Below are positions 52,421-53,481 of a stretch of 64,000 nt of DNA, in pieces. Made by a program: the position numbers and the translations under genes. The first letter of the stretch is position 1; each line of letters begins with the position of its first letter. This DNA is from Lepidodermella squamata (taxonomy: Eukaryota; Animalia; Gastrotricha), in contig JBLDXI010000031.1 in assembly GCA_047495785.1 (NCBI GenBank), positions 744,001-808,000 of the forward strand, read 5' to 3'. The notes below the pieces were generated by a model that was not told the origin of the DNA, searched no databases, and saw only the letters and a list, made by a program, of their open reading frames with translations.

Positions 52421-53050
52421 ATGAGCCATAAGTATTTGGAATACGAATTGCCCCTCACGGATAGTCAGCTGGAGAAACTCCAGGGTGCGGTAAAGAACAA
52501 AAAGTCAATAACACTTAAATTTAGCAAACAGGTTATTCACCAAAACGAAAATTTACGCAAGTTGATGCTTACCCAAACTCAAATAAACAAAGTAGAGAAA
52601 CACAAAGCCAACGACACCGGTGTTCAATTGAAGCTTAGTTTATCGCAACTGAAGAAAAGTCAATCAGGCGGTCTACTTCCCATCCTGCCCATACTTGCGA
52701 AAGCCGCAACGATTGCTGCACCTTTAGCCCTGAGTGCTGTATCAGGGCTGATAAACGGCGCAACCAACGCGATCGGTAATAAATTAGCGGGGAAGGGCGT
52801 AAACGAGACCACCGTACAACTATCAGTTCCAAAAGAGGATTTGACTGAACTAGTCAAAATGGTCGATATGTTAGAAAATAAGAATTTATTGCCACTGGGC
52901 AGTAAACTTTCGATTGATCGCGATATTGAGCAAAAGGGTGGCTCATTCGTTGTTCCACTAGTTGCTAGCCTGCTAGGGACATTTTTACCTACATTGTTCA
53001 AGGCGAATAAGGGAAATGGAGTGTATTTACCATGGGAGTCAAAAAACTAG
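52421..53050 (+). CDS. Core/membrane-active protein precursor (209 aa); also the N-terminal part of a predicted frameshift fusion with the protease
   Basis: LT.SQL.KL..AV..LMLTQTQI.K..V.LKLS..QL N-domain; QSGG-L, LAGKG-V, QKGG-S and KGNG-V sites followed by hydrophobic/amphipathic helices. Confidence 0.85.
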   Translation: MSHKYLEYELPLTDSQLEKLQGAVKNKKSITLKFSKQVIHQNENLRKLMLTQTQINKVEKHKANDTGVQLKLSLSQLKKSQSGGLLPILPILAKAATIAAPLALSAVSGLINGATNAIGNKLAGKGVNETTVQLSVPKEDLTELVKMVDMLENKNLLPLGSKLSIDRDIEQKGGSFVVPLVASLLGTFLPTLFKANKGNGVYLPWESKN

Positions 53051-53481
53051 GGCGCTTCTTCCCACTTTCGAATTCGCATATTGACAAAATGATGTACTCG
53101 AGAATTGGGAAGAAGTACAATGGATGTTACCCCAGGCATCTCTTGCCTATACATTTGAAAAATGGATACTATGTAATCAACTTGGATGATTTTGGAGGAG
53201 GAACGCACTGGGTAGGTATGCAGGTAACTGATGGGGAAATAATTTATTTCGACAGCTTTGGGTTCATTTGTCCCAATGAAGTCATTGAGAGGCGAAGTAA
53301 TCGCGACATTTGGTATTCCACTCATGAAATTCAGCACACCAAAAGTGTGGCGTGCGGTTTTTACGTTGTTTACTTCCTGTCTGAGCTGGCAAAAAATCGC
53401 AATAAGCTTGAAATTCTCCTCGATTTCACAAATGATGGGTCCATTATGAATGATAACAAGCTTAAAGATCTGATGTTTTAG
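53032..53481 (+). CDS. Adenain/Ulp1-like cysteine maturation protease
   Basis: VINLD..GTHW (His), YFDSFG (Asp), IQH (oxyanion Gln), ACGFY (Cys). Confidence 0.93.
   Translation: MGVKKLGRFFPLSNSHIDKMMYSRIGKKYNGCYPRHLLPIHLKNGYYVINLDDFGGGTHWVGMQVTDGEIIYFDSFGFICPNEVIERRSNRDIWYSTHEIQHTKSVACGFYVVYFLSELAKNRNKLEILLDFTNDGSIMNDNKLKDLMF
53041..53116 (+). promoter_or_regulatory. Predicted -1 programmed ribosomal frameshift signal
   Basis: In-frame slippery heptamer A_AAA_AAC (53041-53047) directly before the TAG stop; 6-nt spacer; stem GCTTCTTCCCA (53054-53064) / TGGGAAGAAGT (53106-53116). The protease ORF is in the -1 frame. Confidence 0.8.

What the first reader, a model, noticed from the sequence alone, without database searches (positions are those of the whole stretch)
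52421..53481. Retrovirus-style -1 ribosomal frameshift fuses a Polinton core protein to its maturation protease
Seen in the sequence: the 209-aa core ORF ends TCA AAA AAC TAG, placing the heptamer A_AAA_AAC in exactly the X_XXY_YYZ register. The protease ORF lies in the -1 frame. Six nt downstream a long stem-loop starts: CTTCTTCCCA pairs perfectly with TGGGAAGAAG (10 bp, plus a G-U pair), continued by TTTCGA/TCGAGA. The protease's own ATG (53032) lacks the TCTA motif that precedes the other virion genes. Established: A_AAA_AAC plus a nearby structure is a canonical -1 frameshift signal (e.g. MMTV gag-pro). Inference: the element makes abundant core protein plus a minority ~353-aa core-protease polyprotein (junction ..WESKN-LGRFFPLSN..). 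This would set protease stoichiometry and deliver it into the virion, and the KGNG-V site just upstream could allow self-release. I am not aware of this gag-pro-like strategy being described for Mavericks.
Basis: partly seen in the sequence, partly recalled or inferred. Interest (0 to 1): 0.92.

Follow-up and report, generated by a model that had tools for sequence, protein, structure and literature searches.

The report
Conserved frameshift site joining virion protein and protease
In a Maverick/Polinton virus-like element in a probable animal genome, a 209-residue virion-module gene ends in a slippery A_AAA_AAC site plus stop, kept in all ten diverged relatives, which most likely lets some ribosomes slip back one base and make a fusion with the adenovirus-like maturation protease.

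Summary
ORF 52421-53050 ends TCA AAA AAC TAG. The heptamer (53041-53047) is in X_XXY_YYZ register and the protease ORF lies in the -1 frame. After a 6-nt spacer comes an 11+6 bp stem-loop (53054-53116, -24.2 kcal/mol). In the window alone this could be chance: about 8% for a heptamer somewhere in the overlap, 1.4% for the stem. Relatives decide it. In ten distinct sequences (46-73% protein identity, synonymous sites saturated) heptamer plus immediate stop is kept 10/10, while the stop codon and neighbouring residues vary. An AUG for the protease upstream of the heptamer exists in only 4/10. Coding conservation switches from frame 0 to frame -1 at the heptamer. The conserved N-terminal protease motif lies before the first downstream AUG. 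No relative has the TCTA promoter-like motif in front of the protease. The stem is kept in the six closest sequences but is unexceptional in three distant ones, and formal covariation is weak. More distant Polintons encode the same N-terminal domain fused in frame to the protease. Best reading: a lineage-conserved -1 programmed ribosomal frameshift giving a 353-residue fusion (confidence 0.7). No expression data exist. The 'core protein' label is unverified. A 2024 preprint briefly floated frameshift-made Hexon-Adenain fusions.

The parts
52391..52413 (+). Three TCTA motifs (52391-52394, 52405-52408, 52410-52413) 7-30 nt upstream of the ATG of the 209-aa gene. They look like a promoter or initiator.
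   Evidence: An AT-rich stretch followed by TCTA and then A or G lies 7-17 nt upstream of most virion-module ATGs in the window and in L001-L004 and L012. The background rate is 0.17 TCTA per 60 nt. The function of the motif is inferred.
52421..53050 (+). Upstream (0-frame) gene of 209 aa. It has a confidently folded N-terminal alpha/beta domain (about residues 1-85), two hydrophobic Gly-Gly-flanked segments, and a conserved C-terminal G-x-G-[V/I]-Y-L-P-W-E tail.
   Evidence: There are nine homologues of 190-221 aa at 46-73% identity. Pfam, PDB and fold searches gave no significant match.
53009..53020 (+). Codons for the conserved K-G-x-G motif, a candidate glycine-type protease cleavage site 9-10 residues before the shift site.
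   Evidence: G-x-G followed by V or I is kept in all relatives. Cleavage at this site is inferred, not tested.
53041..53047 (+). Slippery heptamer A_AAA_AAC in X_XXY_YYZ register of the upstream gene.
   Evidence: The heptamer is kept in 10 of 10 distinct sequences, with Z = G in L011. By contrast, 0 of 43 amino-acid-invariant codon columns of the same gene keep their third base in all ten.
53048..53050 (+). The 0-frame stop codon (TAG) immediately 3' of the heptamer. It also forms the first half of the 6-nt spacer 53048-53053.
   Evidence: A stop follows the heptamer directly in 10 of 10 sequences, but its identity varies (TAG, TAA, TGA).
53054..53116 (+). Stem-loop. Outer helix 53054-53064 with 53106-53116 (11 bp), inner helix 53066-53071 with 53098-53103 (6 bp), apical helix 53076-53079 with 53092-53095 (4 bp).
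   Evidence: MFE is -24.2 kcal/mol, in the top 1.4% of the window. A homologous 9-11 bp outer helix starts 7-9 nt after the heptamer in L001-L004 and L007, where it ranks in the top 0.2-1.7% of each locus. In L004 and L007 the 3' arm keeps its bases in a different codon phase. Covariation is weak.
53011..53481 (+). The -1 frame open stretch encoding the adenain-like cysteine protease. The window's own ATG is at 53032 (149 aa). Read from the shift site, the frame gives 144 further codons.
   Evidence: The model has pLDDT 94.3. The top PDB fold matches are the adenovirus proteinase (E = 1.7e-6, TM 0.65-0.74). His59, Gln101 and Cys108 are invariant and Asp74 is nearly invariant in the family alignment.

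Best explanation
The junction is a lineage-conserved programmed -1 ribosomal frameshift site. One mRNA, probably started at the TCTA motifs upstream of 52421, carries both ORFs. Most ribosomes translate the 209-residue protein and stop at TAG 53048. A minority are paused by the stem-loop that begins 6 nt downstream. They slip back one base on A_AAA_AAC and continue in the -1 frame through the protease, giving a 353-residue fusion of the upstream protein and the adenain-like cysteine protease. This would set a low protease-to-structural-protein ratio and carry the protease along with its partner into the assembling particle. The conserved G-x-G motif just upstream could let the protease free itself.

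Shown: the signal, its conservation, the frame switch in coding constraint, the lack of a conserved start codon or promoter-like motif for the protease, and the existence of in-frame fusions in other Polintons. Inferred: that ribosomes shift at all, the efficiency, packaging, and self-cleavage.
For: 1. Heptamer plus immediate stop is kept in all 10 distinct sequences at 46-73% protein identity. Meanwhile the stop varies (TAG, TAA, TGA), the preceding codon varies (Ser, Gln, Glu, Ala, always ending in A), and the C-terminal tail has diverged in L012.
2. Synonymous sites are saturated. Third-position identity to the window is 25-45%, and 0 of 43 invariant-residue codon columns keep their third base in all ten.
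3. An AUG in the -1 frame upstream of the heptamer exists in only 4 of 10 sequences. It sits at the wobble base of a Pro codon. In L012 the -1 frame opens only 12 nt before the heptamer and has no start-like codon there.
4. Upstream of the heptamer, residue identity is 0.85 in frame 0 against 0.45 in frame -1, and 3 of 9 sequences have -1 frame stops. Downstream only the -1 frame is open.
5. The conserved F-F-P-L-S-N-x-x-I motif begins 5 codons after the heptamer and precedes or contains the first downstream AUG, which lies at +24 to +174 nt. Family-wide, other Polinton proteases start 1-9 residues before this motif. In the model the internal Mets lie inside the first helix, residues 14-28, at pLDDT 95.
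6. A stem-loop starts 7-9 nt after the heptamer in the six closest sequences and ranks in the top 0.2-1.7% of each locus. In two of them its 3' arm is kept in a different codon phase, coding different residues. L009 and L011 carry a different local G-rich hairpin 8 nt downstream, with one compensatory pair.
7. The TCTA motif precedes the neighbouring genes but never the protease.
8. A profile of the upstream protein hits the N-termini of in-frame fusions with the protease: P0061 (E = 2.6e-16), P0057, P0032 and P0127. P0061 is one uninterrupted 1239-nt ORF on a 4.5-Mb contig.
Against: - There is no transcript, ribosome-profiling or peptide evidence of any kind.
- In the three most distant relatives (L009, L011, L012) the 75 nt after the heptamer are no more stable than 27-32% of other stretches.
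- Formal covariation is weak. Three pairs show double changes (55 of 500 shuffles reach this). The covariation score is matched by a 1-column slide control.
- Much of the stem could be carried by conserved codons (Phe-Phe-Pro and Gly-Lys-Lys).
- L011 has Z = G, which from general knowledge is a poorer A-site codon in eukaryotes.
- Four of ten sequences, the window among them, do have an AUG 6-9 nt upstream, so separate initiation is possible in those.
- The A-run would serve transcriptional slippage equally well.
- The window's copy is itself decaying: the neighbouring capsid-like gene is broken once.
Confidence: 0.7

Rival explanations
1. Transcriptional slippage. The RNA polymerase adds one A in the A6-A7 run, so a minority of mRNAs encode the same fusion in frame. 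The ribosome does not slip.
For: The conserved element is an A-run: A6 in seven sequences and A7 in three. The in-frame fusion in L013 carries an A12 run at the equivalent place, right after its G-x-G-I motif, and there a slip would truncate the product after 9 or 25 codons. An A-run at this junction is therefore older than the frameshift arrangement. The three distant relatives lack an exceptional downstream structure.
Against: A run of six A is short for appreciable slippage by cellular polymerases (general knowledge, not tested here). Slippage needs neither a fixed codon register nor a stable stem starting 6-8 nt downstream, yet both are present. No contig, including those assembled from sequencing runs of unknown library type, shows a longer run.
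Confidence: 0.1
2. Separate translation of the protease. This could be termination-reinitiation at the closely spaced start and stop, or initiation at AUG or near-cognate UUG/GUG codons 6-9 nt before the heptamer. In that case the heptamer is conserved only because two reading frames overlap there.
For: The start-like codon and the stop lie within 19 nt in 9 of 10 sequences, and four have a true AUG. Under dual coding most changes inside the heptamer would alter a residue in one frame. Most Polinton proteases outside this clade have their own start codon just before the same motif.
Against: The start position behaves as a free wobble base (A, T or G) of a Pro codon. L012 has no start-like codon in the 12 nt of open -1 frame. 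The -1 frame upstream shows no coding conservation and carries stops in 3 of 9 sequences. The last heptamer base could change C to T silently in both frames, yet is C in 9 of 10, although no other silent site of the gene is invariant. A strong stem right after the restart site is not expected. The in-frame fusions in relatives argue that a fused product is the natural state. A restart-promoting upstream element was not tested, because the comparator motif would have had to come from memory.
Confidence: 0.12
3. No function. The overlap and the heptamer are an inherited accident of a compact genome, and the protease in this clade starts at the first internal AUG.
For: In the window alone, a heptamer somewhere in the overlap has about 8% probability. 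The ten sequences share ancestry, so their agreement is not ten independent events.
Against: Synonymous sites are saturated among these sequences, yet the 7 nt are kept. The internal AUG position is not conserved (+24 to +174 nt), and starting there would remove a family-wide conserved, confidently modelled N-terminal motif.
Confidence: 0.05

Closest known systems
Retroviral and retrotransposon gag-pro / gag-pol expression by -1 programmed ribosomal frameshifting
   Same: A structural protein ORF is followed by a protease ORF in the -1 frame. There is a slippery heptamer in register, a short spacer and a downstream stable RNA structure. The expected outcome is much structural protein and a little structural-protein-protease fusion that can process itself.
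   Different: The element is a dsDNA Polinton/Maverick, not a reverse-transcribing element. The protease is a clan CE cysteine protease of the adenovirus type, not an aspartic protease. The upstream protein is unrelated to Gag. The shift site is the last seven bases of the upstream ORF, directly followed by the stop. No retroviral comparator was fetched or aligned (barred), so the likeness is one of layout only.
[quoted passage not shown]
   Same: The same broad group of animal Polinton-like viruses, the same protease family, and the same idea of a frameshift joining a virion protein to Adenain.
   Different: That preprint offers a one-paragraph software prediction with no conservation analysis, and the partner named is Hexon or Penton. 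Here the partner is a 209-residue non-capsid-fold protein. The site is supported by conservation across ten diverged sequences, by loss of the protease start codon, and by in-frame fused relatives.
Adenovirus proteinase with its 11-residue cofactor cut from the C-terminus of precursor protein VI
   Same: The protease model's best structural matches are the adenovirus proteinase crystallised with that cofactor. The gene directly upstream encodes a hydrophobic, Gly-Gly-rich protein. Its conserved last 9-13 residues follow a G-x-G motif, so a short C-terminal peptide could be released next to the protease.
   Different: No sequence or fold similarity of the upstream protein to protein VI was found. 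Cofactor activity is pure conjecture. In adenoviruses the two proteins are made separately.
In-frame fusions of the N-terminal domain with the protease in other Polintons (P0061, P0057, P0032, P0127)
   Same: They share a homologous N-terminal domain, followed by a G-x-G or G-G motif, a Lys-rich linker and the L-S-N-type start of the protease. This is the architecture predicted for the frameshift product.
   Different: They are a single ORF, so every protease molecule is made as a fusion. They lack the second half of the 209-residue protein. L013 has an A12 run where the window's clade has A6-A7 plus a stop.

Membership tests
Canonical -1 programmed ribosomal frameshift signal | Slippery heptamer X_XXY_YYZ in the register of the upstream frame | tested here: met
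   A_AAA_AAC at 53041-53047 is in register. The same holds in 9 relatives, and L011 has A_AAA_AAG.
Canonical -1 programmed ribosomal frameshift signal | Stable RNA structure beginning about 5-9 nt downstream | tested here: inconclusive
   Met in the window and in L001-L004 and L007: spacer 6-8 nt, 9-11 bp outer helix, top 0.2-1.7% of each locus. Not exceptional in L009, L011 and L012 (27-32%). Covariation is weak. Pseudoknots were not assessed.
Canonical -1 programmed ribosomal frameshift signal | Long -1 frame ORF that overlaps the shift site and has no independent means of expression | tested here: met
   The -1 extension is 144-147 codons, against a median of 7 for other in-register heptamers. 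An upstream AUG is present in only 4 of 10 sequences. There is no TCTA motif before the protease.
Canonical -1 programmed ribosomal frameshift signal | Conservation of the signal beyond what coding explains | tested here: met
   The heptamer is kept 10/10, whereas 0 of 43 silent sites are invariant. The coding frame switches at the heptamer.
Canonical -1 programmed ribosomal frameshift signal | Demonstrated trans-frame product or measured frameshifting | not testable with these tools
   No transcriptome, ribosome-profiling or proteome data are available for the host or the metagenomes.
Adenain-type (clan CE, family C5-like) cysteine protease | Catalytic His, Asp/Glu, Gln and Cys in family order | tested here: met
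   His59, Gln101 and Cys108 are invariant and Asp74 is at least 90% conserved in a 38-sequence alignment.
Adenain-type (clan CE, family C5-like) cysteine protease | Adenain fold | tested here: met
   The model has pLDDT 94.3. The top six PDB matches are adenovirus proteinases, with E = 1.7e-6 to 1.2e-5 and TM 0.65-0.74. The family profile hits the ASFV S273R protease and adenain at E = 2e-7 and 3.9e-7.
Adenain-type (clan CE, family C5-like) cysteine protease | Pfam Peptidase_C5 gathering score | tested here: not met
   The single sequence scores 16.2 bits against a cut-off of 21.3, E = 0.0088. It is therefore a distant adenain-like protease, not a member of the curated C5 family by that criterion.
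Polinton / Maverick | Protein-primed family B DNA polymerase | tested here: met
   The 1304-aa ORF 41393-45307(-) has thousands of homologues, many carrying PF03175. Named examples come from corals and molluscs. Its own Pfam scan gave only a weak Endonuclease_7 hit.
Polinton / Maverick | Retrovirus-like (rve) integrase | tested here: met
   ORF 45829-47427(-) matches PF00665 at E = 1.9e-14, and also a PLA2-like domain and a chromodomain.
Polinton / Maverick | Packaging ATPase and maturation protease | tested here: met
   ORF 47474-48196 matches Pox_A32 at E = 5.9e-9. The protease is as described above.
Polinton / Maverick | Double and single jelly-roll capsid proteins | not tested
   The 448-476-aa gene of the relatives, which is broken once in the window (51015-52395), and the ORFs at 48721-50658 have no Pfam or NCBIfam hits.
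Polinton / Maverick | Terminal inverted repeats | tested here: inconclusive
   Inverted repeats are 31777-31978 with 57829-58039 (90-93%) and 34309-34595 with 56600-56886 (287 nt, 100%). The exact ends and any target-site duplication were not determined.
Adenovirus protein VI / C-terminal cofactor system | Homology of the upstream protein to protein VI, and a C-terminal peptide that activates the protease | tested here: not met
   No sequence or fold match was found. Activation cannot be tested here. The resemblance is limited to gene position, hydrophobic segments, Gly-rich motifs and a short conserved tail.

The most novel reading that the evidence does not exclude
The A-run at the boundary between this virion protein and the protease may be an ancient, evolvable switch in animal Polintons. 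Some lineages read through it in frame (A12 in L013) and others need a -1 slip (A6-A7 plus stop). In either case two products result from one gene pair. The short conserved tail after the G-x-G motif may be the counterpart of the adenovirus protease cofactor peptide, delivered in cis by the frameshift. This would be the first well-supported programmed frameshift in the adenovirus-Polinton realm. It would also give a route by which that protease is packaged and activated.
Probability: 0.25. Interest if true: 0.88.

Novelty: new variant of a known kind. Interest (0 to 1): 0.76.

Why it matters
Programmed -1 frameshifting is a hallmark of RNA viruses, retro-elements, phages and insertion sequences. 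It is almost unknown in eukaryotic dsDNA viruses and their endogenous relatives. A conserved site in a Maverick/Polinton lineage would have four consequences:
- It would show that these elements regulate the dose of their maturation protease by translational recoding.
- It would suggest how an adenovirus-type protease is brought into the particle, tethered to a virion protein.
- It would imply that the two ORFs share one mRNA.
- It would correct gene calls. In this clade automatic annotation starts the protease at UUG, GUG or an internal AUG and so truncates a conserved motif.
It also gives a clean, compact natural example for students of recoding: the shift site is the last seven bases of the ORF.

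Tried and rejected
Searches that found nothing:
- The search for related loci found no confirmed relative: upstream-protein alignment in viral and metagenome contigs, protease in viral contigs. The family is rare, with nine proteins among 5.8 billion.
- Pfam, NCBIfam, PDB sequence search and Foldseek (viral and PDB) gave no credible match for the 209-aa protein. The 'core' or protein-VI-like identity therefore stays a conjecture.
- Rfam gave no RNA family at the junction.
- Host identification with a lipocalin-like flanking ORF failed. The animal assignment rests on Pfam hits of the flanking ORFs and on named PolB relatives from corals and molluscs.

Tests that came out weak:
- RNAalifold and a covariance model gave only weak covariation. 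The ungapped alignment also misregisters the 3' arm of L004 and L007 by one base.

Readings rejected:
- Splicing across the junction: there is no room between the conserved tail and the conserved protease motif.
- TCTA as a splice acceptor: about half the motifs are TCTAA.
- Stop-codon readthrough: the frames differ.
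Full report
**1. Setting**

The finding lies in the virion-gene block of a Polinton/Maverick.
- ORF 41393-45307(-) is a protein-primed family B polymerase. 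It has thousands of homologues, many carrying PF03175, and named ones come from corals and molluscs.
- ORF 45829-47427(-) is an rve integrase with a PLA2-like N-terminal domain and a C-terminal chromodomain.
- ORF 47474-48196(+) is an A32-type packaging ATPase.
- ORF 53032-53481(+) is the protease.
- Long inverted repeats (31777-31978 with 57829-58039; 34309-34595 with 56600-56886) probably bound the element.
- Flanking ORFs hit teneurin/Delta-type EGF repeats, a Cys-loop channel (weakly) and a lipocalin.

Together, this makes an animal host probable, though the species was not identified.

**2. The observation**

It is confirmed in every detail.
- The 209-codon ORF ends TCA AAA AAC TAG.
- A_AAA_AAC (53041-53047) is in X_XXY_YYZ register.
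- The protease frame is -1 and is open from 53011.
- After a 6-nt spacer there is an 11-bp helix (53054-53064 with 53106-53116), continued by a 6-bp helix (53066-53071 with 53098-53103). MFE is -24.2 kcal/mol and z = -3.84.

Taken alone this is only suggestive.
- Strict in-register heptamers occur at 0.61% per codon, which gives about 8% for the 13-codon overlap.
- The 75 nt after the heptamer are in the most stable 1.4% of the window.
- In a 201-nt context the z-score is only -0.77.

**3. Relatives**

The upstream protein has nine homologues of 190-221 aa at 46-73% identity, all from metagenomes or sequencing-run assemblies. Their contigs, plus one found through a protease relative, gave ten distinct junction sequences: the window, L001, L002, L003, L004 (identical to L005 and L006), L007, L008, L009 (identical to L010), L011 and L012.
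- All ten have the heptamer as the last seven bases of the ORF, directly followed by a stop. The heptamer is A_AAA_AAC in nine and A_AAA_AAG in L011.
- The stop is TAG, TAA or TGA.
- The codon before the heptamer encodes Ser, Gln, Glu or Ala and always ends in A.
- In L012 the conserved tail has diverged, yet the heptamer and stop remain.

The control is that silent sites are saturated. Third-position identity to the window is 25-45%. None of 43 codon columns with an invariant residue keeps its third base in all ten sequences.

**4. The protease has no conserved start of its own**

- The ATG at 53032 lies across a Pro-Trp codon pair, and its first base is the Pro wobble base. That base is A in four sequences, T in four and G in one. 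In L012 the -1 frame opens only 12 nt before the heptamer, with no start-like codon.
- In the 27 nt upstream of the heptamer, residue identity is 0.85 in frame 0 and 0.45 in frame -1, with -1 frame stops in 3 of 9 sequences. Downstream only frame -1 is open.
- The first AUG after the heptamer lies at +24 to +174 nt. That is within or after the conserved F-F-P-L-S-N-x-x-I motif.
- The motif is family-wide. Other Polinton proteases start 1-9 residues before it.
- In the model (pLDDT 94.3) the window's internal Mets sit inside the first helix.
- Gene callers in this clade started the protease at TTG, or at an internal ATG and so past that motif.

**5. Promoter-like motif**

An AT-rich stretch followed by TCTA and then A or G lies 7-17 nt before the ATG of most virion-module genes. 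This holds in the window and in L001-L004 and L012. The motif never precedes the protease. TCTA is reported as a late promoter motif of the giant virus CroV (PMC13196603). What it means in a probable animal element is open.

**6. RNA structure**

- In the window, L001-L004 and L007 a 9-11 bp outer helix begins 7-9 nt after the heptamer. An inner helix of 4-6 bp and lineage-specific apical helices follow.
- In each of these loci the segment ranks in the most stable 0.2-1.7%.
- In L004 and L007 the purine-rich 3' arm is displaced by one base relative to the codons. It encodes Leu-Gly-Arg-Thr/Lys instead of Ile-Gly-Lys-Lys, yet the bases are kept. This argues for selection on the RNA.
- The outermost pairs show C-G, A-U, G-C and U-G.
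- L009 and L011 carry a different local G-rich hairpin 8 nt after the heptamer, with one compensatory pair. Their overall stability, and that of L012, is unexceptional at 27-32%.
- Formal covariation on an ungapped seven-sequence alignment is weak. 84.8% of cells are paired, which no shuffle reaches, but only three pairs show double changes. A 1-column slide control scores as high on the covariation measure.
- Pseudoknots were not examined.

**7. In-frame fusions elsewhere**

An exhaustive search with the protease gave 2898 relatives. A profile of the upstream protein matches the N-termini of four proteins that carry the protease at their C-terminus: P0061 (E = 2.6e-16), P0057, P0032 and P0127. 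Each has a G-x-G or G-G motif, a Lys-rich linker and then the L-S-N-type protease start. P0061 is one uninterrupted ORF on a 4.5-Mb contig. Its linker begins with an A12 run directly after G-x-G-I. A slip there would end the product after 9 codons (-1) or 25 codons (+1). A fusion of this domain with the protease is therefore a natural state in related elements, and an A-run at the boundary is older than the frameshift arrangement.

**8. The proteins**

- The protease is adenain-like. The family profile hits the ASFV S273R protease and adenain at about 1e-7. The best fold matches are adenovirus proteinases. His, Asp, Gln and Cys are conserved. The single sequence does not reach Pfam's C5 cut-off.
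- The upstream protein has a confidently modelled N-terminal alpha/beta domain (residues 1-85). The rest is poorly modelled and includes two hydrophobic segments, each preceded by a conserved Gly-Gly. It has no significant sequence or fold match. 'Core protein' is therefore unverified.
- Its conserved last 9-13 residues after G-x-G recall, by position only, the C-terminal cofactor peptide of adenovirus protein VI. I did not test this. A model of the fusion would need letters of two frames in one string, and that comparator may not be fetched.

**9. Mechanism and rivals**

The best explanation is a -1 programmed ribosomal frameshift giving a 353-residue fusion, 209 plus 144 by count (confidence 0.7). 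The rivals are:
- polymerase slippage on the A-run (0.10);
- separate initiation or termination-reinitiation at the overlap (0.12);
- no function (0.05).

The remaining 0.03 is unassigned. The register, the spacer and stem in the close clade, the loss of the start codon, and the C kept at the last heptamer base although C-to-T would be silent in both frames all favour the ribosomal reading. No expression data exist.

**10. State of this copy**

Compared with the single 448-476-codon ORF of the relatives, the capsid-like gene just upstream (51015-52395) is broken once by a frameshift in the window. The other virion-module genes compared are uninterrupted. The signal is thus a feature of the lineage, read here in a copy that has begun to decay.

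**11. Prior knowledge**

Full-text searches found no description of this junction. The nearest is a paragraph in PMC11071296. [quoted passage not shown] I therefore rate this a new variant of a known kind.

**12. Limits and disclosures**

- I built no joined, repaired or consensus sequence.
- L001-L013 had been fetched before that point.
- Neither was used anywhere.

Noticed in passing
window 47400-54160, and L001-L004 and L012: An AT-rich stretch followed by TCTA and then A or G lies 7-17 nt upstream of the ATG of most virion-module genes. It also precedes the integrase (47427, - strand). It is absent before the protease and before 53664. TCTA is reported as the late promoter motif of the giant virus CroV (PMC13196603), which is odd for an element in a probable animal genome.
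   Followed up: partly
window 31777-34595 and 56131-58039: Long inverted repeats probably bound the element: 31777-31978 with 57829-58039 at 90-93%, and 34309-34595 with 56600-56886, which is 287 nt at 100%. Six copies of a 73-nt tandem repeat lie at 56131-56672. This would make the element about 26 kb, with a gene-poor left third (34.6-41.2 kb).
   Followed up: no
window 45829-47427 (-): The integrase combines a parvovirus-VP1-type phospholipase A2-like domain (PF08398), an rve core and a C-terminal chromodomain. The same domain set appears in a coral gene model (P0168).
   Followed up: no
window 51015-52395 (+): The capsid-like gene is a single 448-476-codon ORF in relatives. In the window it is broken once by a frameshift. 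The other virion-module genes compared are intact.
   Followed up: partly
window 53011-53017: A second in-register heptamer (G_GGA_AAT) lies in the same overlap, right where the -1 frame opens. It is not conserved in any relative, so it is probably chance.
   Followed up: yes
L004 4501-4507: T_TTA_AAT lies in register two codons before the stop of the 233-aa gene, with a 202-codon -1 extension into the next gene. It was not flagged at the corresponding junction in L002, so it is probably chance.
   Followed up: partly
L013 3718-3729: An A12 run encoding four Lys lies directly after the G-x-G-I motif in the in-frame fusion of N-domain and protease. A slip there would end the protein after 9 or 25 codons.
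   Followed up: partly
window 5600-31200: Three tandem copies of about 9.4 kb (77-90% identity) carry EGF-repeat ORFs and a reverse-transcriptase fragment (12873-13853).
   Followed up: no
window 1760-1859 and 62130-62229: Rfam reports two 100-nt tRNA matches with identical scores, which probably contain introns. ARAGORN reports no tRNA.
   Followed up: no
proteins P0030, P0131, P0037, P0051, P0063: Other Polinton-type proteases carry unrelated N-terminal partners in frame. One partner is a lipase-like domain with a G-H-S-x-G motif, and another is a roughly 210-residue domain of unknown kind. N-terminal fusion therefore seems a recurrent way of handling this protease.
   Followed up: no
window 41393-45307 (-), residues 554-597: The polymerase carries an Endonuclease VII-like insert (PF02945). 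The hit is weak here but recurs in many homologues.
   Followed up: no
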